From positions 6,200,001 to 6,264,000 of the forward strand of contig OU015567.1 in assembly GCA_907165135.1 (NCBI GenBank): a DNA stretch of 64,000 nt, given 5' to 3'. A program made the translations under genes and the position numbers. Origin of the DNA: Oikopleura dioica. Lineage: Eukaryota > Animalia > Chordata. A model generated the notes under the pieces. The model was not told where the DNA came from, made no database searches, and saw nothing but the letters and a program-made list of their open reading frames with translations. Each line of letters starts with the position of its first letter. Position 1 is the stretch's first letter. Positions 35,314-61,401 of this stretch are shown piece by piece.

Positions 35314-36568
35314 TTTCTCTTTTAGTAAAAAGTACTTGGAAGGACGAGCCTCGACGTAGAAGAGCCTGGAAAATATCATAGTGGGCGTAAATAGAGCAAA
35401 TGTTTGTTCATGCATTTTCGGTGTACATAAGTCACAGTTCATGACTTACAGGTCAGAAGTGATCTCAAATAGAAATTTATTTGAGTCGAAAATATATATA
35501 ATATTATATAATTCAGAATTGCTTTACGAATTGTGATAGCATAAATTTTATTCTGAAAAGATCTTAAATGGAGTTTGATGGAGATAATCGCTGTTAGTAA
35601 TCGGTTTATGCGACCACCGACTGGTTGTCTTCCTGCCTTGTCGCCGCGCTGGCTAACGCGTGGGGCGGTAGCGAGCCCGCGCGCCACTTCATTCTAGTGA
35701 TCACGATCGCTCGCTCTCTAACTCTGTCTCTCTTGTCGCGAGATAAAGGTTATCACTCTCGCATTCGACAAGTCGGGTTCCTTTTAAATCAATGAGAATC
35801 CTCATCTGTTTTCCGAGCTAAATTAATCGCTCTTCAAGAAGCGTCGAAATAATGATAACCTTGTTAGTTGCACTCTTCATCCAAAAATAACAAGCTTTCA
35901 AAATTAGGCAAAATAAAGCTAGCTTAAGTATCTCAGGCCAAACTTTTTGGAAAAAGGCGACGTTTGAAGAATCTACTCCTGAAATATTGTCTGGCTTTTC
36001 GGAGTTAAATGTAACTGTCCGCCATAGTGTCTGATATAAAAGTAGATAGTGCAGGATAAAACTCATATTGAGAGAAAAACTTTTGATTCTAAATAAAAAT
36101 TTGAATACTTTCATATCGACTACAGCTAAGATCATATCTATCAGAAGTAAATAACAGGACAGTTATTGAACAAATGAAATCAGACTAAGCACTATCAATC
36201 GAATTAAAGTATCGCATACATAAGTTCAATAATAAAGGGTTGGTGGTGTCGCTTCGGTGGAACCCAGCGAAGTCTCTCTTGCGCCGCTTGCACCGCCGCT
36301 CTCCTGGTGGCCGTGTCCTGGCGCCGGCCTGTCTTTGCTAGGCGTCGAAATCGCCAGCTACATTCACACCACCATCTCCACTGATAACCACTCTAGATAT
36401 TCCGTCACCTAACCGAACAGAGAGATATCGCCGTCCTTGTCCGATAGAGCAAAAAATAGAGCTATCTCGTCTCCTGCTGCCGACAATTGCGGGACTCGCC
36501 AGATAACGACTCCCAATCAAGGTAAGAAACGACAATGCTAGATAAGATAATGGGGAAATCTATTAAGT

Positions 36569-41736
<5,168 letters not shown>

Positions 41737-43549
41737 CTAGCGGACGGTCAGCAGCACCCGAGTGCGTTGACTCCCGCTCCCGCTCCTGAAGGTTACTTGA
41801 GCTAGTTCTCTAGTCACCTTTTTCTCGAGCAATTTCGACGTCAATTCTCCGCTGCCTGGCTGCCTCGTTAAGACTCAATCTTCAATTACATTTGTGCTTT
41901 TGAAGTGTTCTATTACGTATTTCGTTTTTACCTTTGTATCAGACCACTAGCCACAACCTGAGATTATAATATTTTAATTCTAAATAATTTACTCACAAAC
42001 TTTTAAAAATAATAACTCACGTGAGCAACTCAAGTTTGAATGCAGTATGTAAATTTCAATTTCTTCCTCTTTTTTCATCCTTTCTCTCCGGAGATCCGGT
42101 GCTGTGTGATTTATCTTCAAACAACCCAAAAAGTGTTCGTTGAAAAATAAACATATCTTCTGTCAAAAAAAATATTACTCCGTAGAACACTACTTTCTTC
42201 CCGGACAAACAATTCTACCACTGTAATATCTACTGTAAATATCTGAAATGTAAAACAATTCAACAATTTTGAATAGTAGCAGCCAATAAATGGATGCTTT
42301 GTTCATATTTAAAGTAATAAAATATTTTGCCTAAAATTGAATCTTGCCTTGTTCATTTTTTTTTGCAGATATTATCAAATATCCCAGTTAGTGAAAAAAT
42401 AGCTTCAAAGACACACAAAATGTAAAAAAAATGAGTAAAAGCAGTAAGTAAAGGCAGACTGCCTCGACACGGATTTTTCCAGGTTCTAAGCTGGAATTTC
42501 CAATGCTTTCTTTTTTTTTTGTTAGCCAGAGTCTTGGTCGAATCAGCCTTGATGTCCCATCATCAGATGCAAAGATTCAATACAAAAGATTTCCATTTCT
42601 TTTCCCAGAGGCATTTTTCCCGTGTAGTTCTTTATACCTTCCTTGGAGTGTAAGGCTTAGATTCTTCTCATTCGGGAATGAATACCATTGGTCTCAGAAA
42701 GTATGACGAAAAGATTGGAGAGTCAAATATAATTATCTTCAATATTGATAGCTTCAAGGGGAAAGCCACACAAAGTGGGTCCTTCCCGATGCTAATTTCT
42801 GATTCATTCGACTGTCACTAAGTCTCACTGCGTCAGATTCAAATCTGCATCATAATCCGACTGGTACGTTTGAGCTGCGTTCACAGCTCATTACACTTAG
42901 CTGACATCCATTAGAACTTTTTATCACGTGCCAGGATCAAGCATCAATCAGCCCAAAGTGGCATGTTTGGATCAGCCGAGGCGGGAAAAGCATGGGCTTA
43001 CTCGATCTTATCGAGCCCGTTTCCGGAAACAGGAGCAGCCAGGAAGTCCCTACAGAGACGAACGAGTGACCTTAATTCTTTCCCAGGCCTAATTATTATC
43101 CAAATTTCGACTCGACTTTTTTAAAACGTAAAAACTTGAAATCCACAAAAAGGGAATCGGCGAAGGGTTTGGCGAGTTCTAATCCATCCGTTTTTGAGGA
43201 TTAATTTCCGCTCAAAGTAGGTGATAAGAGAAATTTTGAGTGAAGCTGGCGGTTGATGATGTTGCTCGCGATATTTAGGCTTCGTTTCCTTATCTTGCAC
43301 GTTGTGCCGCCTCCCGAGCAAGTGCTGTCAACACTCCAGAAAAAGAGCTCGAAAAGCTATTGACTGTAGTTTTCCCGGTGCCTAATGATATTTCATAAAC
43401 TAAAATTGTCATTTGATCATGAAAATCTCACTTTTTCCATCGATTTATAGCTATTTTTCTTAAGGGTATCAACATGATATCTTCCAAAGTGTTAAACGCA
43501 TCTTTGGTGGTGTTGGTGGTGCTATTCTTTCAGCCAATCAGGAGCGAGA

Positions 43550-46500
43550 TCATGCGATAAGATGCTAAGAGAGATAGTGCGCCGGAACAGATAGGGGGCG
43601 CTGTTCTGAAAAACCCTGCGCTAAGCCAATCAGTGAAACGTACTTCCGCCGCAGTACTTCCCTTTTCATCAGCAACTAAATCTGTTTGAATCTGTTTGAT
43701 TCCATGATCCTTTGGAGCTTCATCATTTGACCTCAAGGAGCATGGGGTCTCTCTGTTGTGTAGCAGTTTTAAGAGCGGAAGTTTTCATCGGAGGAAGGAA
43801 CTTTGTCACGTGATACCCATCGATAGTATGCACTTCCACTTCCGGTAGGGGCACTTCGCCGATCGAAATTTGAAAAGATCAGATATCAAACAGGCTACTT
43901 GAGGAGGGACCACTTAATTTTCTGAAGGTTGCATCCGCAACTAGAACTGTTCTACCAGAATTCGATCGGTTTCGCTATTTTTTCGAGCATGGCCTTTGCT
44001 GATTGTGATTATCGATAAGGTGGTGGAGGAGGAAATGAATTAGCGGCTTTCTGATAAGGTTGTGTCACACCATTACGGGCAGGTGCTCCTCGCGAGAATT
44101 CCAACTGATAACCGAAAAAAATGTCCCCAGCCACTTGACCATCCTCTGCTACTGATAACGACCCTGGACAGGAAGCACAATCATCTACAGACAGTTCTAT
44201 ACAGAGTACACAGAGTACCTTTCTTTTCAGAGCAGTTTCTTTTCGGCAACAAAGGAAAGGGCAAAATGTCGCGGATAGGTAAAACAACGGTGACTTCATC
44301 CGGCGCTCCTGTGATCGGCCGCGGAGGATAGGCTAGAATTCCGCCGTGGGGAATTTCTAACGTAATAAAGCACCGCTGATAAGCAGAAGCAGCAGTCAAG
44401 TAGTCAGAATCCGGTTCCTGCCAATTTCGCGCCAAACATAAAACCAAGCTCCATCCTGTTTCTACACCTGAAGGGGAAACATTTTTCTAGCGACGAAAGA
44501 GCCGCTTTTACAGGAAAAATGATGGTTCTTTCTCTTTTTCATTTTGGCTCATTTTCTATGGGAAATCAGATAATGCTGAGCCAGTGTTTCAGGAGCCGTT
44601 TTGGCAACAAAAATGTAGAGATATCACTCCGGAGCTGCTTCGCCGCGACTTCGGACCATCACGTGGTCCCTCTCGCAACCGCCAACCGCGGGAAAGCTTC
44701 TGTTATCAAACCAAACAAAATCGTTTTTTTTTTCTCCATTTGCGTAAATTTTAAAGATTTAACTAGCCAACATATAGGCTTATCACTAAAATAGTCAATA
44801 GAAGATCCTCCCTTAGGGCTTCTCTTGATTGAGGGGGCTCCTTAATTTTTGTAAAATTTAAAGCAGGTGCTAGGGCTAGATTCATGAGGTGCAATTTCGG
44901 GCGAAGGAGTCAAAATTTTGGAGAAATCTGGCGGCGCTTGGCACGCTGAGGAAGATAAGAAATGCCCGCAATGGTGGTTTAATTTTGGCGCAGCCGCCAC
45001 CACCAACTCCAAAGATAACACCAGAACATGTGTTTTATGAGAGGAAAGGAAAAACCCTTGTTCCCAAGCCATTACTACTCGTAAGTAGTTTTTCTCCGGT
45101 ACCCTTTTTTTTGCCCTTGTTGAGCCGCGGCTAAACACCCGCTGCGCCTTATCAGTAAACTGTTTAACTTAGGTGTGATTTCGGGCTTCTTTATCCATAC
45201 CGCCGCGCATGCCGCCCAAGTTTCCCTCCTCTCGAGCCCTATTTGAAAATATTTCCGCAAATGGAGATAACGCGGCCCACATAAATTGCTCTCCACTCTG
45301 GTGGAGACGGTGGTGTTTAGCTAACTGCCGAGAGTAAAGTACCATTTCCTATTTGGCCACTGAGATTTTATCGAAAAGAACAAACTTGACAAACAAGTTT
45401 CTTCGAGCCAGCCAACGAAGACGATTTTACTGTAGCTCAGCTTCAAGAAATGACGACTTTGCTAATTCTCGATTCTACGGTTAGATATTTTTGTTTTGCA
45501 TGCACTTTGATAAGCGCGTATAAAACAGAACTCCTCTTGATAAGTTTCTATAGCGGAAGGAACTTTTTGTTTTGGGACTTTCTTCAATTTTTTCCTTATC
45601 GTTCTTTAGCCTTTGTGATAAGGCGAAATGACCAAAGCTTTAGTCTCCCGCTGCGCTTATGACGCTAGAACTATTCGCATAAAAGATACTTTGCCTACCT
45701 CGGGTTAAAAATCCTTAGTTTAAAAAATGAATATCGGATATGTAAAAAATTTAAAATATTTAATCATTTCCGCGCTCTCTTTTCCAGCTCTGCCACTTCC
45801 GACAGGTCCTATTCCATTTTCCCAAAGCTATGATTATCGTCGACTCTATTCTTTAGGCGCTTTATCTTGCTTGTCATCGAAAACGCTAGAATCTAAAAAA
45901 AGAAAGAATGCGTGGACTGTGATTCAATCGCAATCGTGCGAGATTGAATTTGTACGAGTTGTTGAAGATAGCGTGGTTAGCTCAATTAGGAGGAGATAGG
46001 AGTTCTCGTCGTTATCGAATTGGGCGAAATCGGTGGAGATGGAGGATTTATCTTATTCCTCTAACAGCTATCAACGCTCGCCCCGCTATCTCCCCACGTC
46101 AGAACGAAAAGAACCTTCAGATTACGCGTCCAGGTCATTTATTTAGCGATGACCTCTTTCGCGAACACCCTTATCGTTCCTTGTTGATATCCTTTATCTG
46201 CGTAAACCGTCACGTAAAGAGAAGGGAACAGATAAAAAGAATGAACTTGTCGACTGATTTATTATTTAAGGGATTCGCTCGTGTGAACACTGAACATATG
46301 TACTTGCGGGGAACAAATGGGACGAAAAAAAACGGAAAAACGAACGCTCTTATCAATTTTTTATTTGGCGGTAAAGAGATACGGTGTCTAAAATTGAACT
46401 GATTGCTTAGAATGATTCATGAACTTGAGGAAAAACGGGACATTACAGTTCATTTTCTGACAAAGAAACTCTAGAATTGAAATGTCGTGAGAACGTTGTA

Positions 46501-48560
46501 CCCTGGCACAGCGGGTGACCAAAGCCGGAAGCACCTGCCGAGCAGTGCACCTGCAGGATGTTTCATTTGGCGGCCACCAAACCCCTTTTAAAACATCCCA
46601 AATTTGCATACATGCCCCTTCAAATTCACAGCAGGGTACTTGTTTACTGGCTTACTGATAAGACGCGCTCTTTTTAATGATTTCGAAAGCTGCTGATCAG
46701 TGATCACGTGACAATCAATCAATGGAAAATACTAATGCATAAAATGACGGAAGAATTAATTTCCGTGCGGCGCGTGAAAATTGCCATCTCCCGCCGAGTA
46801 CCAGCTCCGGCAAAGATCCTTATCAGCGGTCAGGGTTTGTAATTACACCGCGCAGCGGGTGACCACCTCTAATACCACCATTCATTTTTTCTTTTCGTAA
46901 AATATTCCGCTAAGGATCACGTCTGTTGTCACAATAAGGATGCACAGTGGACCAGTAGTGGCCTTTATCGCTCAATAGTTCTCGCGGTCGTCGCCACTTC
47001 TAGCGGCTCGAGAGGCTTTTCAACAGGTGAAAATTTTGGAAGCCGCAGTTTCCACTTGCGACGCTCATTCGTTTCATACTTATTCCTATCGCGAGGGATA
47101 AACTCGCGCCAGATGATCTGACTGCTCCCGTTGACTGAGCTGTTTGGTGATAAGGGACTCAGCAGGAGATCGTTTTTCAGCTTAGCCGGATCAGACTTTA
47201 TTTTTATCTCCATTTCTACAGCTCCTTGAAAAGCTGGTAGAATCGTAAACTTCATATTCCGCCAGGCTCCGGCCTGTCTAGATCAAATGTCTCAGCCCTC
47301 TAGAAAAAGAGCGCCTGGTGATAAGCGTTATCTAAACTGATTTAGATAAAACTGAGATCAGTTCCTCTCGTTACGTGAGCGATCATCGCCAAATCGCGGC
47401 AGGACATCGATAAGAGCCGCGCGATAATCTACGTCGGCTATCGCCAGTCTTGATCTCCTGCTGAGCTTATCAGAGCCCAGCTCTGTTAACCACTGATAAG
47501 CGGTAGATTACGTTCCCTTCACGTGTATCTAAGATTTTTAAAAGCAATGGGCGAAATGGAAATTCTAATACAAGAAAAGTTTCGTAACCCGGTCGACTGT
47601 CAAACTCGACGTCAAGTACCCCGCTGCGTTGATACTGATAAGAGCACGTCTGATTCGTTTCCCTCGATGATCCGGTGCTTCTTCTTTCCAAAAAGAAGAA
47701 CCACAGCCAAATTTATGCAGGATTTGCTATTTTTTTAAATTACGTAGTTTTTTCGTAAAAAAATTTCTCCTTGATTTAAAAATTTTTACGAAGGGTGTGT
47801 ATTTGTGTAGTTTTTGGTGCAGCTGGTTTGGTGGTGTCGTCCGTTTTCCTTCGATGTCGGTGCACCTGGCGCGATAAGATCTTAGTACGCGCCCGTCAAC
47901 AGCTGAAGTTTGACTGGCGACATGCCGAGCACGAAATGCTAGAGCTCATCCCTCTATCGGTATCCTGCTGAGTTTCCGACAATCTGATGATAGTTTTTAT
48001 CAATCAAAAAGGGACCATGTTGGAGACGTAAGAGCGCGGTAAATTGAATTTCCGCTGTTGAAATGTCTAAGTTTTCTGGCGATTGCTGATAACGTGTTAT
48101 CAGCGGCTGGTGATAGGTCTGGGATAAGATCGGAACTGAGTGATGGAACAGATCCATATCGTTCATGTCTTCTGATAAGAGAAAGTTGCTGGCTGATAAG
48201 AGGAATCTCTCAGTCCTCGATTAGATCAGACTCGGCAGGAGATAACTCGCCAGGATGTCGATAACTGGCTCAGACTCGGCGGGATATCCATCTGCTCACG
48301 ATAAACGTGCTGATAACACTTATCCTCAGATCGTGCCGCAACATGCTCAACCCAGAGAAAGTGAATATTACTAACACTTGTAGATAGACACGTATCTAGA
48401 ATAGTAGAACCTGCAAATTTATTCATGCAACTTTGATAAGAAAAGTTACCGATAAGAAAATTTTCTTAGAAGAGTTCTCCAAAGGACCAAAAGAACCCTT
48501 GTTCTTGACTTTCATTTAGGAAGGCCTACTGATGTTTACTGATAAGAAATTCATCAAGAA
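43550..48560. promoter_or_regulatory. Candidate enhancer field with dense GATA-site clusters downstream of the GATA gene
   Basis: Hand counts of GATAA/TTATC: 6 in 44009-44382, 8 in 45149-45621, 8 in 47149-47641 and 15 in 47873-48545. Confidence 0.7.
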
Positions 48561-48964
48561 TAAATAACCAGGAGTCCCTTTATTTTCTCAAATTCTTTAT
48601 TCAGATTTGATCCACGTTCTTTTGGAACCCTTTTGACCTTTCCCTAGAAGCAGGCCCATAGAGCAAGAGGGGAGAATAGATGGGCCTGATGCGAGGGAGA
48701 ATGTTGAGGCATTTCTTCACCTCGCCAAAAACACGAGTTCGGGCAAAGGTGTCGGACATCTTGTGATAAGGACGAACAAACCTTATCGCTAGTTTTAATT
48801 CAGCGCTGAGATTAGCTGTTACGAAAATGGATTATCCGCGGCTCAGTGCTACCGAGCGAGCCTTCTTCCATTTTGCGCATAAAATCCTTGCCAAAACTCG
48901 ACAGATAAGATATCATTATTTCGCCTCGCCTAATTTAAAACTCACTTGCTCACAAGACTTATAC

Positions 48965-49962
48965 CAGGGTGTCGAATCGCGGGGGAGCGAGAAGGGATCG
49001 CGCGAAAACGCTCACGCCCGATCCCACGAGCGAAGGGATCGCTCGGGCGCCCCTTCGAACGAGAAGGGATCGCGGCAAAAAAGCAAGCCAAAAGCCGTGG
49101 GCTAGCGCCAGAGTTCAGGCGCGAGATTTGCTACAACCGAGTCCGCACCGCCTATTCAAATTTTCCTTATTATCAAATTTGATGAATTTTCCAGATCTTA
49201 TCTAGTTTTTCCTCCTCTTTTTTCTCGAACAACAAAATCTTATTCAAATTTATTCTTTGAAATTAAATGAGTATATAATTTGTAAGTTTGTATAGATAAA
49301 ATTTTGACTTATTTGCCCGTAATGATATTCACTCTCCCTTAATATTATTTCAAAAAAGAAGTTATATCATAGACTATGATTCATAGTTATCAGTTTCGTT
49401 TATTTTTCCATCCGGAAAACTACTGAAAACATTAGCGCTTCATCTCCTCACCGGGACACTCGAAAAGCCGTATAATCTCGGTGGGTGCACACTCTGACCT
49501 ACTGTAGGGAATCAGTCGCAAATAAATCTGGGCTACCTTAAAAACAGCTCTCGGAAGTGGTAAGCTACCTGTTTGTGACAAAAATATTGAATTTACGGTC
49601 AATCAGTTTCTAGAGCTCACTTTTTGGGACTTAATCAGTTAGAAGTCGTTTATTACTCCGAGACTCAGAATATTTTTACGTATTAGGAATCAGCGGAAAA
49701 AGTTCCAAGTGGAGTCCATATTTCACTGAAATGGACTTTATTGAAACATTTTGACTGTTTACAAAGTTCGCTCGTTCTCGTAAAATTTTGATCCCTTGCG
49801 CGAAGGGATATCCCACGCGCGAAGGGATCGGGGCGATCCCTTTGTTTTTGTGAGCGCTCCCTTCTCGTTGCCTCTCGCTGCTGGGCGATCCCTTACACTC
49901 TGGGAGCAAAATGGCGCTGCGGCGCGCGATCCCTTTTCGTTCCCCCGCGATTCGACACCCTG
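48965..49962. mobile_element. Non-autonomous hAT-type element (998 bp)
   Basis: 22-bp perfect TIR CAGGGTGTCGAATCGCGGGGGA, perfect TSD ACTTATAC (48957-48964 / 49963-49970), and repeated subterminal GAAGGGATCG motifs at both ends. Confidence 0.95.
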
Positions 49963-50778
49963 ACTTATACAGTAGTTGCTCAAATTGGTGCCGCTTCTGC
50001 AAAAATGATTAAAAAAAGCAAAGAGTTGATACAAAGACCAGAAAATAATGAAAATGAATCTCTAAAGTCTATTTTTTTTCTAATTGCTACAAAGTTCATT
50101 TCATTATTGAACTGTTGTATATTATGGTATTACAAGGTCATTATCATCAGTCCTAATGAACATCAATTTTAATACGGACAATTGCCAATAGAATATATTT
50201 TGTCTATTTTTTGTCGTTTGACTTCTGAGACGACCAAAACCGTTCGTCGAGACCAGGGGTGGATATTTTGATATCAAACCAGTTTTTCAAAACTGTCGAA
50301 TCATTTATTTCATCGTTTCAAAATTTGAAATTTCAATTGAAATTTCAGGAAAAAGCCGATGCAATGACTGAAATCTACTGAAAGTGAAAAAATAGCGTTT
50401 TCAAAAGATAAAGCTTCGTGCGGAGTTTTGAAATGAATTTGAAACTGCAATAATTGACATTTCAATCAGTTTTTCTTGTTTAGCGACTTGAAAGGAATTT
50501 GAAAAATGAAATTGAAAAAATGAATCGTTGCAAATTTGAAGAAGGCGCAAAAGGAAAAACTCAGCACGCCTGCCATCCCTTTTTGACTCCCGCATTTCCC
50601 AAAATCCCGTATTTTAAAATCCTAAATTTCTGAAAATCTAGTATTTCTCAAATCGCCAATTTAGGATTCTGCGGATTCAGGATGATGGGAAATGCGAGAT
50701 TTTTTTTCTTTTGAGTTAATTGCTTTACCAAATTTTCATTGATTGATCATATAACTTTATTTTCTTGGCTTCTCCACA

Positions 50779-51090
50779 GCCAATCCCGGCTTCACCAACT
50801 TTCATCCCGGCTTCAATAACTTCGATCCTCGCTATACATACGTCAATCCTGGTGGCTCAAACAACAATTCGGGCGTCACTTTCTTCAATCCTAGCTTCTC
50901 AGATGCTAGTCCCGGCTTCTCAGTTCTTTATAATTGCTTCTTGAATGTCGATCATGGCTTCTCCTAGATTAGACTGACGTTGGTAAAACCTAGATTGAAA
51001 CTAATGAAGCCGGGATTGACGTCGAAGAACCTAGGATTGACATTAGAGAAGCTATGATTGAAGTAGGTGAAGCTAGGATTGAAGAAATTA
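50779..51090. repeat. Tail-to-tail arrays of a degenerate 21-bp unit
   Basis: aatcc(c/t)(g/a)gcttc recurs at about 21-bp spacing on + (50779-50967) and on - (50964-51090). Confidence 0.75.
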
Positions 51091-51990
51091 CGGTTCCAAT
51101 TTTCGTCGAAAGAATATTGAGCTGAGCGAACGGCTGAGCGGTCGACCGAGCTGAGCGAGCAGACTTTGAGCAAGAGGACTGTAAGCAGTGTATTTTTTCC
51201 TCAAAAAATACTTTTTCAGTTTTTATTTTGAGTGTCGACTAGTGTCGGACATAAATTTCCGAAATGCGGCTGAAGAGTGTAAAAAATCTGAGTGTAAAAA
51301 AGAAGTGTTTTGACCAATTTTTCTAATAATTTCTGTTATTTTCTTCATTTACTCACCAAAAACACTAAAGAAAGTGTTGACTTACCGCTCAACCGCTCAC
51401 TGATCTCATGTTGAGCGAAACCCGACACTGAAATTTCGGCGACCCTATAAAATCGGGTTTTTGTAGGCTATTTTCGTCGGATTTCTCGTCGGATCTACTC
51501 ATAGGTTTGATTAAAGATCTACCAAGTCAATCAAAAATGAAAAGGATCAACAAAAATGAAACAGAAATTGATCCCTCTTTAACCCAGTCAATCAAAAATG
51601 AAAGGGATCACAAAATGAAAATTTTGCGATTTTTCCTGTCGAAATTCCATAAAAAATTTTCAAATCGGGCTTGCGCTGTCGAAATTTTTTTGTCGATTCC
51701 AGACACCACCCCTCAAAATTTTGGGAAAAGATGCTGGTAAGGGGGACATATAATATATCAAAATGATCCTCAGAACACGGGGATTCTAAAAATGCCGCAT
51801 AGACACCCGTCATAAAGACTTGAGAAATCGGGGGGGGGGGGGATAAAATGACGATTTGGCGGGGTAAGGTTAAAACACAGTAAAAACAGCTCAGCCTTAT
51901 TAGGGTCCGCCCAGCTCGGGTCAGCTTAACTACCTTAAAAAAAGTCTGCTCAGCTCAGCTCAATGACCTCTGAAAAAGGCCAGCTCAGCT

Positions 51991-52603
51991 CTGGGCTCGG
52001 CAAACTGTGTCAGGAACAGACACAGGAACAGGAAAAAAAAATTCTGTCCCACATTTTACACAGGTACCGCGATTTCATTTAGACTGTTTGCAACTCTCTC
52101 TCTGGTCACAAAAATCAAGCCTTTTTTGTGACCAGTAACAGGCAGGTTTTTTTACACAGCTCAGGTAACAGGTTACACAGGTCAGGGCCTGCCTAAACAG
52201 GTCTGAGCAGGTCAGAAAACAGAAAACAGGCCCTGTGACAGGCCAAAAAACAGGATATTTCTGTGAAAAATATTGCAAAAGAAAACAAAAAGACGCGAAT
52301 TTATCGGCTATTTTAACTAGTTAACTCTTTATACCGTATATTATATAAATTATACGTCTTTCGCTATTGATTTCTTTAAACATCTTCCCTGATTTATGCA
52401 GTTCTTGACCAGATTACACAGGAACCTGTCTATGGTCAGGACCTGAGCGGAAAAAAACAGGCCTGTTTTAGTCAGAAACAGGAACAGGAACAGCATTAGA
52501 AAATTTTTTCCCCCGATTTTACACAGGTACTCAGACAGGTTCCTCAAAAACAGGAAACAGGACCTGTGACAGGTTTTTACACAGCTCAGTTTGCCGAGCC
52601 CAG
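51991..52603. mobile_element. Nested 613-bp TIR element with 8-bp TSD
   Basis: 17-bp TIR CTGGGCTCGGCAAACTG and TSD GCTCAGCT (51983-51990 / 52604-52611). It interrupts a cagctc-rich tandem array. Confidence 0.9.
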
Positions 52604-53529
52604 GCTCAGCTCCGCTCAGCTCAGTTACCTCCGAAATAGGCCAGCTCCGCTCAGCTCAGAGAACTTTTTACTCGGGTCAGATTAGCTCGGCTCAGCAAAA
52701 ATAAAGCAAAATTTGCAACTCTGCAGATAAGGGCCTTATCTTTTTAAAAAGCCGTAGCTGAGCTTAGGTAGCGGAGCTGAGAGGAAAGTTTAGCCAAGCG
52801 TAGCGGAGCTGGCAAAAATTTATGTGGCCGTAGCGGAGCTGGTCAGAATTTTCTACACTGTAGCTGAGCAAAAACTTTTTTTTCCGTAGCGGAACCGTCA
52901 GCTCCGCTATCTCCGCTACGCAAATTTCCAACTGTGGCCCCACATGTTCCAGTGTGTAGCTCAGGCTATGACGGTAATTTTGAGCGCGAGAATTTCTTGT
53001 CCCGGAAGGTCTAGGAAGTGGTACAAAGTTCGGGAAGTCGACCAAAAATTGGTCTTTTTGAAGAAAATTTTCCTTTTTTCTATAATTTATGAGCCTAACT
53101 TCACTTTTTATACCTCTTCAACGCATTGTGTCCTCCAGTGTCCTCCAAGGCTCAGCAATTTGAAATTGATTTGAAAAATGAAAAAAGATTGAAAAAATCT
53201 GTCCAGATTTGAAAACTTTTCGCAAAATGCAAAATGAAACAGTTGAAAATTTCAAAAAAGGCCCGGCGTCATTATCATTTGAAATAAATTTGCAATTGCG
53301 AAAATGAGTTGAAAAAAGGATTATCTTTTGAAATTTCAAATCAAAAACGGTTGAAATAATGATTTGATATCAAAATATCCACCCCTGGTCGAGACTCAAA
53401 GTCTACTCTCATCGCATCCAGACTTGCTGGCTCGTCTTGGTGGTGCATCCTCTCTTTGGTGGTGTTTATTCAACTGCTTCCGGAATCGCTGGCGGAGATC
53501 GTCCTCAAGCTTAGCTGGGAGGAGGTTCC

Positions 53530-54010
53530 GGCGCTTATCTCTCACGCCATCTATATCTTTCGCACCCGATAACGCAGGCGCTAGTTGCTCCCCCGCCGAG
53601 CGCAGAGAAAGATCATCCTGCCGATAATAAATTCGCCAATCAGAAGAGGGAAAGACTGATAAGAGCTTTTGATCCCCCGCTGCGCGGCTAATTGCTAATT
53701 GCCCCCTTTCCATCTTTGATTGTTTGCAAATTGGCCTTGTTTGCAAACCGGCGGTGTTTGGCCATCACAGCGGGCGATGAAAGAGGAGAGAATGTACATG
53801 AAGCCTTGGTGATAAGGCAATTCCAAAATCCGGCGCCGAATTTGATGTCCCACCGAGATGCATCGTCTGATTTCTGGGTTGTAAAAATCACTGATAACAG
53901 ATTGATAGCGCGCTTCCGAAAACTCTTCCCGCGTCAGAAAGAAAAACGAAGGCTTTGGAAAAAAGCAAAAACACTGTTTTACGGCCAGTATACTTATGTA
54001 CTGATAAACT
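53530..54010. promoter_or_regulatory. Second GATA-site cluster
   Basis: GATAA/TTATC at 53535, 53568, 53623, 53658, 53811, 53893 and 54003; Zic-like sites at 53676 and 53766. Confidence 0.6.
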
Positions 54011-58069: not shown

Positions 58070-61000
58070 TCATTCATGGTCATCTGAGCGATGGTCGACG
58101 GTATTGTGCACGATTTCGGCCTGGCGATGCTGAAGAGAGTGTTTAAAAATTATGTGACCGCAGTGCGTTAGAGACGCTATAGAATGTGCGCGACGCTATC
58201 ATTAAAATTTAAAAGCACCCGAATAGAGGGAGAAAATAGCCATTTTTCTTTGGAAGGAACATTCTCTAAGAAGGGTTCAAACAAGGTTCAACTTACTGAT
58301 AAATAGGCGAACCAGTAGACCACGTTGAAGAGGAAGAATGTCAAGGGAAACATCACTCTGGAAACACGGTCGATGTGGCTGTCTCCTGTCATTGCTTCCA
58401 TCGCCCGCTGTCTCATTAGACGACGATTTCGACGAAGTTTCTTCACAATACTTTTACTGAAATCATTTCATAAGCGCGGGCACTATTTTTAGTCTTTCAA
58501 AAAATTTCGGGCAGAACCAAAAAATGAATTGAGTTTTTGGATGACCAATAAGATGGCTGTATTTGGCCTACCGGCCAATCAAAGCCCTGATTCATCAAAT
58601 CATTTCCATATTTTGGTGTCTGGTAGACAGGCACTTACTTATTCGCTAATTGCGTCCAAAAACTAGCTCCAGATGACCGCCCGAATCTGGACAAGATGGA
58701 GCCCGGTCTCGTGATCTTGGAGCGCGAATCATCGGAATTCGACATTTTGGAACTTGCGAAGCGTCTCCGGACTCCATTAACAGCGCTTGGCTGATAATTT
58801 CCATCAGAGTCCAGTCCCGAGTCTGAATCGTCTCCGTTGACTTCGAGTTGTTGGATGAGCGCGCGTGGTCTAATAACCGTAAAGTAATTGACAGAGGCGA
58901 ATTCTATTAGCGCGGCAAAGCAATAGGTGAAGCAAGTGACGATAAACCAGTCCATGGCAGTGAGGTAAGACACGTTAGGTATGCTGCGCCGCTCCGAGAT
59001 GCTGAAAACTACAGTAGCTGCTTACAGTAACTAACAGTTACTGACCTCAATGTTGTCAGTGACAGAACTGTCATGACACCAAAGACCATTCGCGCGGGCG
59101 TGGCTTCTTTATTCACCCAGAAAGACACCTAGTTAATCACCAATGAAACCAACCTGGCAGGAGTAATCTTACTTGTGATAATATTACAATAAGCATACAG
59201 GGCAGGTAGGTTTGGACGATAAAGTAGCCAAGGTGGCGCTTCAAGTGGAAGCTTATGATAAGTACAGAATATTTTCCGAATTGATGATCTTTTTCAAAGG
59301 ATAAAAAGAAGATGCTTGAACTTTGGCCAGTACTGAATGTACTAGTAACGTAGAGAGGGGGCTATGATTCGAGCCATCCAATATCTCTAGAATCTGAGCT
59401 GGTGGTTAGGGTTAGGGACTGGGAACTCTTCAGGGGAATCCGGGGGGCGAAACCCCCTGATTTAGGCCCAAGGTGGGGGGTCTAGGGGGCGTAGCACGCT
59501 GGGTTAGGTTTAGGGTTAGGGGCAGCTCGAATGATAACCCCCTACTAAAGTACTGTACTGATGATATCCTTTCCTATTACTTCTTCTGTCCAACTATGGT
59601 GAAGCAAGGCAAATTGAATCAGCCTGGAATTAGCGGTTGGGCAATCTACGGGCTCGCTTTGTCCGCCCAAATTGCTCTTTGTCGTCCAGTTGAAGATCAC
59701 GTCCTCAACCGTGTACCTAAAAGGTGTCGCTATTAATAATTCTCCGGGTCTCGAAAAACTTTAATAAATTATTGAAACAACCGACTGTTCTCAATGTTCT
59801 CGAACATAGCCTCCTATTACAAGCGACAAAAGAAAAATAAGACTTTAATTAATTTGTAGCAAACATAGATGGAGTGGGGCCCTGATTCAAGGAATAAATT
59901 AAATTTTAATTTCATATTATCTTTTTCGGGAAAAAATCAAATGGTACATGTTCCTTTAAAATTGATGGATTAAGGGTGTAACATTCAGTTTTCAACTAAT
60001 TTAAATATCAGCCCCTTAGGAGCTCAAATACGAGTTTCATTCACTGATAGTAACAAGTTCGTATTCAACCATTTTTCAGTTCAATTTTGCCCCCTTTTCG
60101 AGGCCTACTCACCCGTAGGATCCATAGGTCAAATTGCAGGTGTGCACATCCATAGGGAAATTAGTAACAGTCATTGGGCAGTTGGCTCTGATAGTAAGTC
60201 GCGAGGTATACAGAATATCTCCAGTGGCATTAATCCGAAGTAATCTGTTGGGCAAGGTCATGTTATGGTTCACTAGAGTGGCGGATTAGTCCCCTGATCA
60301 TCGCGATTGTCTGCAATTAGCATGAACAGTGCATCGATTTTAATGAGTTCAATTTGCTACCCTTCAATTTACAGTCAAAGGCACCTTTTTTTCTAAAAAG
60401 AACTGGACGAGTCATAGCGTCTAAGCGTCATTGCGCGCCAATTGCTTTATTACTATTTCGAGACGTTCTTTTTAAATTATTCAAAAACGATGTTATTCTT
60501 CCTTGATTCCGAAAATTATTAGTCGAAGTTTCCCTATGAATGGAAACCCTCGTTTTTCGGTTTTTGCCTGCAGTTAAGCAGGACTAATCCGTTCCTGATT
60601 TCTTTCCATTTCTAAAGAAGGCATCTGGAGTCCATATTCGATTAATCATGACATTGCTGAGGCTTTATTTTAGGTCCTCATTTATTGGTTTTTCTAATGT
60701 ATGCCTTCGCAATCGCAATATTGGCTTCGTTGATTTATCAGAACATAGCTAAATAATTCAGAAAAAAAAACAGCGAAAAAAGACGATTTTGATGACGGTA
60801 CCATTCCTGAGAGACTTGATATGGGTAGCTTTGAGTTCTCCGTTTTTGCTCATGATTGACTGATAAGCGAGTCGAGGATCTTTCCATTTCTGGCGCAGGA
60901 ACATGTCAACTGTGAATTCTCGTTTTTGATCATCCACTGGTCCGAAGCCTGAATTCTTAGTTCTACAGATTCTCCCATATAATCTGATTAAGGCCTTTTA

Positions 61001-61401
61001 TCCTCCTCTTTAGGGCAAAGTTTACCTGTGATGAAAACATCAGACTGAACATACAGGGGTTTCTTGCCAATGTCTGGCCTAAGTCGATGATCATAATCGA
61101 GTAGGATCGAGTCCAAAGTCGCTGAAACTTCTTTTGCGGTTGGATCCTTTATCTGGTGTCTTCAACAATGACTTTGCCGAAGAAGAAACGCACTATTGAA
61201 ATGCAAGTTGCAATTTATCGATAATAGAACTGTTAATCAAGAGAAAGCTGTCAGATTTGGTCAAGAAAATTATTGATCACAATATCGACTAGCGGCCCCT
61301 TTTTACAGAGAAGGCAAGGTCAAGATTTCCCTCTTTCGACACGATTCCTTTGCTTTCACCATGGAGGCCTTCCATAGCACCAGCAGAAGCCATATCCACA
61401 T
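58070..61401 (-). CDS. GABA-A receptor subunit, alpha-like (Cys-loop anion channel)
   Basis: Signal peptide at 61401, [23 protein letters not shown], Cys loop [27 protein letters not shown]2 [21 protein letters not shown]3 [18 protein letters not shown] and M4 [10 protein letters not shown]. Confidence 0.93.
59356..59543. mobile_element. Degenerate MITE-like element with telomere-like repeats in a GABA-A intron
   Basis: Imperfect inverted ends agggggctatgattcgagc / gctcgaatgataaccccct (17/19). Internal ttagggttaggg blocks and a GGGGGCGAAACCCCC hairpin. No clear TSD. Confidence 0.6.

What the first reader, a model, noticed from the sequence alone, without database searches (positions are those of the whole stretch)
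43550..54010. Multi-kilobase field of GATA-site clusters beside the GATA gene: candidate autoregulatory domain
Seen: in an otherwise gene-dense window, ~13 kb after the GATA gene has no recognisable gene. It holds at least five clusters of GATAA/TTATC (6, 8, 8, 15 and 7 sites in 370-670 bp), many as CTGATAAG. A rough chance expectation is about 1-2 per 500 bp. Four more sites lie at 36383-36550 near the start. Established: vertebrate Gata1/2 autoregulate via GATA sites. Inference: a positive-feedback enhancer array.
Basis: partly seen in the sequence, partly recalled or inferred. Interest (0 to 1): 0.75.

Follow-up and report, generated by a model that had tools for sequence, protein, structure and literature searches.

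The report
Conserved GATA-site field beside GATA gene
[quoted passage not shown] It is most likely that gene's enhancer array, a familiar kind of element, and whether the gene feeds back on itself through it is untested.

Summary
Window 44000-48950 has 60 GATAA and 31 GATAAG against 12.5 and 2.8 expected. This is the strongest local 6-mer enrichment in the 64-kb window (log10 P about -20). The sites share an extended logo, T-A-C-T-GATAA-G, that background sites lack, and they are not repeat-derived.

- The gene-free span is about 16 kb, between the convergent 3' ends of a Gata1/2/3-class gene and a Cys-loop channel gene.
- 4.1 kb of it is two young transposons with 8-bp target duplications. 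Without them the 53.5-54.0 kb cluster sits about 0.6 kb from the main field.
- The four "start" sites lie in exon 1 (5'UTR). Two are conserved.

Conservation:
- A divergent O. dioica lineage aligns only in blocks. These hold 41 of 60 sites in 43% of the DNA.
- Two orthologous loci from other taxa also carry non-repetitive 3' GATAAG fields, with perfectly conserved GATA cores in their shared blocks.
- Three other related loci show little or none.

Best reading: a conserved array of GATA-responsive enhancers for the adjacent GATA gene. Auto- or cross-regulation is plausible but unproven.

The scan has noted similar GATA fields on other DNA of this genome (s1-371406, s1-390171).

Verdict: a new member of a known kind, of moderate interest.

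The parts
36376..42320 (+). Gata1/2/3-class transcription factor gene with seven exons. Approximate exons: 36376-36777 (ATG at 36569), 36962-37123, 37265-37418, 37484-37664, 39721-39877 (N-finger), 40791-40919 (C-finger), and 41313 to about 42320 (stop 41734-41736, then a roughly 600-nt 3'UTR with AATAAA near 42.3 kb).
   Evidence: Two C-x2-C-x17-C-x2-C fingers. PF00320 on both finger exons, E 1e-16 and 3e-18. The C-finger exon's best solved relative is GATA-3, 4hc7. Exon map from the spliced cDNA-like contig L010 of a divergent O. dioica lineage; boundaries are approximate.
36376..36550 (+). The first ~95 nt are nearly identical in the divergent lineage and hold one GATAA plus four GATAT/GATAG cores.
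   Evidence: Alignment of L010 to the window. Sites 36383 and 36541 are conserved. Site 36502 is deleted and 36546 is changed in the other lineage.
42900..43999 (.). Proximal, weaker part of the field, beginning about 0.6 kb after the poly(A) signal. It has 6 GATAA, 4 of them GATAAG.
   Evidence: Site list. Only 43600 onward was covered by laid reads.
44000..48950 (.). Core GATA-site field: 60 GATAA including 31 GATAAG and 27 TGATAA. Extended logo T-A-C-T-GATAA-G-(A/G). Orientation 36 plus, 24 minus.
   Evidence: No repeats. No Pfam hit on the ten longest ORFs. No Rfam family. One scRNA read in 6 kb.
43753..48916 (.). At least 11 blocks that align at about 85-99% to a divergent O. dioica lineage: 43753-43870, 43993-44120, 44555-44720, 45148-45359, 45482-45654, 45980-46216, 46485-46645, 47255-47695, 47783-48005, 48086-48345, 48724-48916. 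Between them lies unalignable DNA of changed length.
   Evidence: tables 5 and 8. 41 of 60 GATAA sites fall in these blocks, which cover 43% of the DNA (P 7.5e-5). None of the 38 listed substitutions hits a GATAA core. Indels of 1-2 nt inside blocks argue against coding (table 4).
48965..49962 (.). Transposon 1: a 998-bp non-autonomous element with 40-nt terminal inverted repeats starting CAGGGTG and a perfect 8-bp target-site duplication, ACTTATAC (hAT-like). Multi-copy in the genome.
   Evidence: Contig depth rises 2-5 fold over 49000-49599, and five contigs with different flanks end at 48965 in run X6. No aligned DNA from X18 beyond 49000, and almost none from X19.
50254..53387 (.). Transposon 2: a 3134-bp non-autonomous element with terminal inverted repeats starting CAGGGGTGG and a perfect 8-bp target-site duplication, GTCGAGAC (hAT-like). 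It has internal 21-bp and GCTCA tandem repeats.
   Evidence: GATA content is at background.
53535..54010 (.). Distal GATA cluster: 7 GATAA, 6 on the plus strand, with field-type flanks, plus one CCCGCTGCG motif. It sits about 0.6 kb from the core field once the two transposons are removed.
   Evidence: On its own it is only locally significant.
58291..61161 (-). Next recognisable gene: a Cys-loop ligand-gated ion channel, convergent with the GATA gene. Its 3' end faces the field.
   Evidence: PF02931 and PF02932 on three exon ORFs. Exon ORFs listed.

Best explanation
The field is a conserved array of about a dozen short cis-regulatory modules (enhancers) lying 3' of an Oikopleura dioica Gata1/2/3-class gene. 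Each module carries 2-10 GATA-factor sites of the (C)TGATAAG type. Gata1/2/3-class proteins, either the gene's own product or its paralogs, would occupy these sites and drive or maintain transcription of the adjacent GATA gene, together with a few other inputs such as a CAGGTG E-box.

Shown: the motif excess, its specific logo, its non-coding and non-repeat nature, conservation of blocks and sites, and linkage to the GATA gene in other taxa.

Inferred: that GATA proteins bind, that the target is the GATA gene, and that the loop is self-activating.
For: - Enrichment: GATAAG 31 against 2.8 expected. It is the top-ranked 6-mer in the region and the strongest local 6-mer cluster in the window.
- Site type: in-field sites have G at +1 in 51% against 14% outside, T at -1 in 46% against 31%, and C at -2 in 40% against 22%. 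This is the classical WGATAR-type site.
- Not repeats. No Pfam or Rfam match.
- Constraint within O. dioica: a divergent lineage aligns only in blocks separated by unalignable DNA. Site density is 17.7 per kb inside blocks and 6.3 per kb outside (P 7.5e-5). None of 38 listed substitutions falls in a GATAA core. Two alignment break-points still keep an ACTGATAA site in the other lineage.
- Independent taxa: the ortholog L006 (same MFNGMY start and MAFG end) has GATAAG 25 against 4.9 in its 10 kb downstream, rank 3 of all 6-mers and not repeats. L008 has GATAA 28 against 10.3 in 3.7 kb. L006 and L008 share nine colinear 3' blocks, six of which contain perfectly conserved GATA cores.
- Linkage: these loci share only the GATA exons with the window, so the field travels with the GATA gene, not with the channel gene.
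- Context: the gene is a two-finger GATA factor closest to GATA-3. O. dioica has four Gata1/2/3 paralogs, and the two examined by double in situ (b and d) are expressed in epidermal domains.
Against: - There is no binding, accessibility or reporter data.
- Three related loci lack a clear 3' field. L001-L004 reach only 1.7-fold. L005 is not significant. L007 has none downstream, although it has 11 GATAA in 312 bp of an intron.
- The field's sequence cannot be aligned to the other taxa, and shared k-mers are no more frequent than in controls. Homology of the fields therefore rests on motif content and position.
- The field is equally 3' of the channel gene.
- Site-level conservation within O. 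dioica rests on partial tables from one read-laying run.
- No matched control stretch was laid.
Confidence: 0.6

Rival explanations
1. The field is a GATA-responsive enhancer array for a different gene. The GATA factor would act on the convergent Cys-loop channel gene or a more distant gene, and the position beside the GATA gene would be incidental.
For: The field lies between two 3' ends, so orientation does not decide the target. Enhancers can skip genes.
Against: The field starts about 0.6-1.7 kb from the GATA gene's poly(A) site and ends 4.3 kb from the channel gene. Orthologous loci L006 and L008 keep a GATA field 3' of the GATA gene, and no channel exon lies within 10 kb. O. dioica gene order is heavily scrambled between lineages (PMC11067885), so retained linkage is meaningful.
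Confidence: 0.13
2. The sites are read by a factor that is not an activating Gata1/2/3 protein. Candidates are a repressive or atypical GATA-type zinc-finger protein or a boundary protein, making the field a silencer or insulator rather than a positive-feedback enhancer.
For: This genome encodes unusual GATA-like factors (scan notes s1-371406 and s1-371502, unchecked). CGATAA is also enriched, 15 against 3.2. The sign of regulation cannot be read from sequence.
Against: The dominant logo, (C)TGATAAG, is the canonical site of two-finger GATA factors (established knowledge). No boundary-type motif stands out.
Confidence: 0.12
3. The span hides an unannotated transcript (a long non-coding RNA, or a gene with unusual coding), and the conserved blocks are its exons.
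For: Run X19 is only guessed to be RNA and covers the blocks. Only about 4% of the scRNA run was read, without a positive-control stretch.
Against: One read in 6 kb of raw scRNA data. Blocks carry 1-2-nt indels between lineages. X19 contigs run through the unalignable DNA between blocks and have the same profile as the DNA run X18. No Pfam or Rfam match. None of this would explain an 11-fold excess of GATAAG on both strands.
Confidence: 0.05
4. The excess is neutral: a decayed satellite, transposon remnant or compositional quirk without function.
For: Two transposons did insert into this intergenic region.
Against: No direct, inverted or tandem repeat families in 44.0-48.95 kb. Flanks of the sites differ. 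The transposons are GATA-poor. Sites concentrate in conserved blocks. The same motif excess recurs in unalignable orthologous loci.
Confidence: 0.03

Closest known systems
Vertebrate Gata1/Gata2/Gata3 autoregulatory enhancers (for example the WGATAR-bearing Gata2 upstream and +9.5 elements and the Gata1 upstream enhancer). From established knowledge; PMC2936534 is one paper on dispersed Gata2 cis elements.
   Same: Conserved non-coding modules carrying GATA sites, spread over kilobases around a GATA1/2/3-class gene. GATA factors are proposed to act on them.
   Different: The vertebrate modules have one to a few GATA sites each, spread over tens to hundreds of kb, and their occupancy and function are demonstrated. 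Here about 60-76 sites are packed into 5-7.6 kb, all 3' of the gene, in a very compact genome, with no functional data. No sequence homology to the vertebrate elements was sought or shown.
Homotypic clusters of transcription-factor binding sites and GATA-site clusters in invertebrate enhancers (C. elegans elt-2 and intestinal TGATAA promoters; Ciona early ectoderm GATA/ETS enhancers). From established knowledge, recalled and not checked here.
   Same: Many copies of one motif within a few hundred bp. The extended in-field logo, ACTGATAAG, resembles the extended TGATAA site recalled for C. elegans ELT-2.
   Different: Those examples are mostly promoter-proximal and under 1 kb. Here about eleven such clusters are strung along 5 kb downstream of the gene.
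Clusters of conserved non-coding elements around developmental regulators (genomic regulatory blocks). Conserved non-coding elements have been catalogued genome-wide in O. dioica (PMC11067885).
   Same: A gene-free span next to a developmental transcription-factor gene, filled with conserved non-coding blocks whose linkage to the gene survives rearrangement.
   Different: Classical blocks span far larger distances and have mixed motif content. This one is dominated by a single motif.
Other GATA-motif fields noted by this scan in the same genome: upstream of an atypical GATA-like gene (s1-371406) and around the first exons of Friend-of-GATA (s1-390171).
   Same: Multi-kb TGATAA-type fields at genes of the GATA network. 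The FOG note also reports CAGGTG, which is co-enriched here.
   Different: Those fields are 5' or intragenic, and this one is 3'. They are AI notes that I did not re-examine.

Membership tests
GATA-factor-responsive cis-regulatory module array (homotypic GATA-site cluster) | Statistically over-represented WGATAR-type motifs with a consistent extended logo | tested here: met
   GATAAG 31 against 2.8 expected. Top 6-mer in the region and in the window-wide scan. Logo differs from background sites.
GATA-factor-responsive cis-regulatory module array (homotypic GATA-site cluster) | Non-coding and not generated by repeats or transposons | tested here: met
   No repeat families. No Pfam or Rfam match. 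1-2-nt indels inside conserved blocks. The transposons lie outside the core and are GATA-poor.
GATA-factor-responsive cis-regulatory module array (homotypic GATA-site cluster) | Evolutionary conservation of the sites | tested here: met
   41 of 60 sites lie in the 43% of DNA alignable to a divergent lineage, and 0 of 38 listed substitutions fall in cores. GATA cores are perfectly conserved in 6 of 9 blocks shared by L006 and L008. Caveat: the tables are partial and no control stretch was laid.
GATA-factor-responsive cis-regulatory module array (homotypic GATA-site cluster) | Occupancy by a GATA factor, open chromatin and enhancer activity | not testable with these tools
   No ChIP, CUT&RUN, ATAC or reporter data could be reached.
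Autoregulatory GATA-gene enhancer | Physical linkage to a GATA-factor gene, retained in orthologous loci | tested here: inconclusive
   Clear in the window, L006 and L008. Weak in L001-L004. Absent 3' in L005 and L007, although L007 has an intronic cluster.
Autoregulatory GATA-gene enhancer | The gene's own product binds the sites and its expression depends on them | not testable with these tools
   Four Gata1/2/3 paralogs exist. Sequence cannot tell self-regulation from cross-regulation.
GATA1/2/3-class transcription factor (the neighbouring gene) | Two GATA-type C4 zinc fingers with the GATA1/2/3-like C-finger | tested here: met
   PF00320 on both finger exons. Best solved relative is GATA-3, 4hc7, 124.6 bits, ahead of GATA-1 and GATA-4. 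The literature reports no Gata4/5/6 in O. dioica. No phylogeny was built, and which paralog (a-d) this is remains undetermined.
Transposon- or satellite-derived motif array | Sites embedded in repeated units or bounded by terminal repeats | tested here: not met
   for the window. for L006.

The most novel reading that the evidence does not exclude
Dense homotypic GATA fields may be the wiring principle of the whole GATA network in this ultra-compact chordate genome. A field would sit at each network member: this Gata1/2/3 paralog, an atypical GATA-like gene, and Friend-of-GATA. All would share a GATA plus CAGGTG grammar and form a mutually reinforcing memory circuit that locks in epidermal (house-secreting) cell identities. 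Each lineage would rebuild the fields by site turnover, sometimes 3' and sometimes intronic.
Probability: 0.2. Interest if true: 0.6.

Novelty: new member of a known kind. Interest (0 to 1): 0.42.

Why it matters
O. dioica has one of the smallest and most rearranged chordate genomes, and its cis-regulatory logic is largely unmapped. This field gives about eleven short conserved blocks that can each be tested in a reporter. They have one dominant input motif and sit next to a gene family that expanded after the loss of Gata4/5/6. That makes it a compact system for three questions: whether GATA feedback loops known from vertebrates and nematodes exist in larvaceans, how motif fields persist through sequence turnover, and how regulatory linkage survives extreme genome scrambling. 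The type of element is well known, so the value lies in a clean example rather than a new principle.

Tried and rejected
1. Fetching the orthologous field from other O. dioica lineages.
   - A word search with a field ORF found nothing.
   - The JGI scan returned only short contigs or cDNA-like contigs that end before the field.
   - The last-exon search gave only a 1.6-kb contig for the close lineage.
- The third word search was not spent on a further gamble.
2. Nucleotide alignment of the window to loci of other taxa. Only GATA exons align. Shared 12-14-mers between fields are no more frequent than in control stretches.
3. A hidden gene. No Pfam hit on the longest ORFs and no Rfam family.
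4. Special spacing of paired sites. Four inverted pairs lie 5-9 bp apart, but about six gaps that short are expected at this site density (my own arithmetic), so there is no evidence for it.
5. Strand bias. 42 plus against 25 minus is marginal.
6. The nine GATAA at 61-62 kb are of background type, mostly GATAAA/GATAAT.
7. Failed calls. One search timed out and was rerun. One search failed on coordinates taken from a locus table that did not translate cleanly, and its window ORFs were rerun; the L006 ORFs were only read by eye, not rescanned against Pfam.
8. The spliced GATA protein was not assembled. Exons were searched one at a time by reference.
Full report
**Setting.** Earlier notes of this scan identify the genome as Oikopleura dioica, apparently the Okinawan lineage. 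The window has 42% G+C.

**The GATA gene.**
- It lies on the plus strand and has two C-x2-C-x17-C-x2-C fingers at 39743-39817 and 40819-40893. Both match Pfam PF00320.
- The C-finger exon is closest to GATA-3 among solved structures.
- The literature reports that O. dioica lost Gata4/5/6 and has four Gata1/2/3 paralogs. The two examined by double in situ (b and d) are expressed in epidermal domains (bioRxiv 10.1101/2021.02.10.430586). I could not tell which paralog this is.
- A JGI contig, L010, is a spliced cDNA-like copy from a divergent O. dioica lineage. It gives the exon map 36376-36777, 36962-37123, 37265-37418, 37484-37664, 39721-39877, 40791-40919, and 41313 to about 42317.
- The ATG is at 36569, the stop is at 41734-41736, and a poly(A) signal lies near 42.3 kb.
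- I searched exons one at a time by reference and did not build the joined protein.

**The observation.**
- GATAA/TTATC runs at about 3.3 per kb over the window but at 10, 11, 9, 13 and 17 per kb from 44 to 49 kb.
- Against the rest of the window, GATAAG is 32 against 2.5 expected and CTGATAAG is 11 against 0.26. A GATA word is the top enriched k-mer for every k from 5 to 8.
- Under an order-1 Markov model of the region, GATAA is 60 against 12.5 and GATAAG is 31 against 2.8.
- Over all 6-mers and all 5-kb windows, GATAAG at 44001-49000 is the strongest local enrichment (log10 P -20.4). The next ones are words inside transposon repeats.
- In-field sites have a distinct logo, T-A-C-T-GATAA-G-(A/G). 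G at +1 is 51% against 14% outside, T at -1 is 46% against 31%, and C at -2 is 40% against 22%.
- No direct, inverted or tandem repeat family explains the sites.

**Anatomy of the gene-free span.**
- The next recognisable gene is a Cys-loop ligand-gated channel on the minus strand at 58.29-61.16 kb. The intergenic region is therefore a convergent 3'-to-3' span of about 16 kb.
- The longest ORFs in it have no Pfam match, and there is no Rfam family.
- Two non-autonomous elements with terminal inverted repeats and perfect 8-bp target-site duplications account for 4.1 kb: 48965-49962 (duplication ACTTATAC) and 50254-53387 (duplication GTCGAGAC). The 8-bp duplications and CAGGG termini suggest hAT-like elements, which is an inference.
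- The first element is multi-copy, judged from contig depth and from multiple flanks ending exactly at 48965 in run X6.
- Both elements are GATA-poor. Removing them brings the 53535-54003 cluster to about 0.6 kb from the core.
- The ancestral field is then about 7.6 kb, with GATAA 76 against 19.1 expected and GATAAG 38 against 4.3.
- DNA from 54.1 to 58.3 kb is at background.

- Two runs labelled with the same species (X18, X19) hold only 7-9% of the 31-mers.
- They align in blocks of 118-441 bp at roughly 85-99% identity. Between the blocks lies DNA that is replaced by unlike sequence of a different length, for example 122 bp replaced by 136, and 378 by 200.
- This internal contrast indicates that neutral DNA between these lineages is beyond alignment and that the blocks are constrained.
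- The same mosaic appears in the intron and 3'UTR when the window is compared with the Logan contig L009.
- The listed blocks cover 43% of 43600-48950 but contain 41 of 60 GATAA sites. That is 17.7 per kb inside and 6.3 per kb outside (P 7.5e-5).
- None of the 38 listed substitutions falls in a GATAA core, where 3.1 are expected (P 0.04).
- At two alignment break-points the other lineage's loose ends still carry an ACTGATAA site close to the window's own site.
- Indels of 1-2 nt inside blocks argue against coding sequence.
- Caveats: the tables were truncated, no control stretch could be laid, and X19 is only guessed to be RNA. Its 27-kb contigs and its profile, parallel to X18, suggest it is DNA.
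- Raw single-cell RNA reads gave one read in 6 kb, but only about 4% of that run was read and there was no positive control. The absence of transcription is therefore only weakly supported.

**Other taxa.** A word search with the last exon found exon-sized ORFs on marine-metagenome contigs, and I fetched their DNA. Only GATA exons align to the window.
- L006 is an ortholog, with the same MFNGMY start and MAFG end. Its 10 kb downstream has GATAA 68 against 24.7 and GATAAG 25 against 4.9. GATAAG ranks third of all 6-mers, behind a simple ACC repeat. The field is not repeat-derived.
- L008 has GATAA 28 against 10.3 in its 3.7 kb downstream.
- L006 and L008 share nine colinear short blocks 3' of the stop codon. 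Six of them contain perfectly conserved GATA cores.
- L001-L004 show only a 1.7-fold excess.
- L005 shows none in 5.5 kb.
- L007 shows none downstream, although it has 11 GATAA in 312 bp of the intron between the finger exons.
- The fields cannot be aligned between the window and these taxa, and shared k-mers are no more frequent than in controls. What is conserved is motif content and position, as expected if sites turn over.
- No channel-gene exon lies within 10 kb of the orthologs. The field therefore stays with the GATA gene, in a species complex known for extreme rearrangement (PMC11067885).

**The 5' sites.** The four sites at 36383-36546 lie in exon 1 / the 5'UTR. The first ~95 nt of that leader are nearly identical between lineages and hold one GATAA and four GATAT/GATAG cores. 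Sites 36383 and 36541 are conserved, and 36502 and 36546 are not. L006 also has four GATAA sites 350-465 bp upstream of its ATG.

**Secondary motifs.** After masking the GATA sites:
- CAGGTG is 7 against about 1.1-1.6 expected in the field. It is also enriched downstream in L006 (11 against 3.2) and L001 (10 against 2.3).
- Five of the six window copies of CCGCTGCG lie in the field. From memory this resembles a Zic-type site, which I did not test.
- These point to combinatorial input but are individually modest.

**Interpretation.** The evidence fits a conserved array of GATA-responsive enhancers serving the adjacent Gata1/2/3 gene.
- Binding by GATA proteins follows from the canonical site type (established knowledge), not from data.
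- With four paralogs, self-regulation cannot be told apart from cross-regulation.
- Activation cannot be told apart from repression.
- The scan has noted similar fields at an atypical GATA-like gene (s1-371406, followed up as conserved) and at Friend-of-GATA (s1-390171, with CAGGTG). These are unchecked leads that make a network-level reading plausible.

**Verdict.** The element is a new member of a well-known kind and of moderate interest.

Noticed in passing
window 41722-41805; proteins P0002, P0003, P0004, P0009, P0011: The stop-codon context (TGA followed by CTAGCGGACGG) is 92-94% identical across species. In five taxa, ORF calls that read TGA as Trp continue as MAFG-W-L[AP]DG (WLADG in four, WLPDG in P0011). 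Two of them also share a later QPNFTS. This fits a conserved readthrough extension or a conserved 3'UTR element, and bears on scan note s1-336632.
   Followed up: partly
window 41737-42338 against L009: Between O. dioica lineages the GATA 3'UTR is a mosaic of perfectly conserved 20-40-nt blocks within unalignable sequence. These are likely post-transcriptional control elements.
   Followed up: no
window 36376-36470: The first ~95 nt of exon 1 are almost identical in the divergent lineage's cDNA-like contig and contain five GATA cores: GATAA, GATAT twice and GATAG twice.
   Followed up: partly
window 48965-49962 and 50254-53387: Two non-autonomous transposons with CAGGG-type terminal inverted repeats and perfect 8-bp target-site duplications (hAT-like, young). 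The first is clearly multi-copy in run X6.
   Followed up: partly
window 44080-47863; L006 5129-15128; L001 10379-20378: The CAGGTG E-box is co-enriched with GATA sites 3' of the GATA gene in three independent loci: 7 against 1.6, 11 against 3.2 and 10 against 2.3. This echoes the scan note on the Friend-of-GATA locus.
   Followed up: partly
window 45139, 45648, 46851, 47621, 53677: Five of the six copies of CCGCTGCG in the window, mostly as CCCGCTGCG, lie in the field. Two sit next to a GATA site. This may be the site of a second factor.
   Followed up: no
L007 7105-7416: A more distant relative of the gene has 11 GATAA sites in 312 bp of the intron between the two finger exons and none in excess downstream. 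GATA clusters may sit at different positions at GATA loci.
   Followed up: no
window 36778-36961, 37124-37264, 37665-39720: Several introns implied by the cDNA-like contig do not start with GT at the approximate BLAST boundaries. This is consistent with the non-canonical splice sites reported for O. dioica, but the boundaries were not refined.
   Followed up: no
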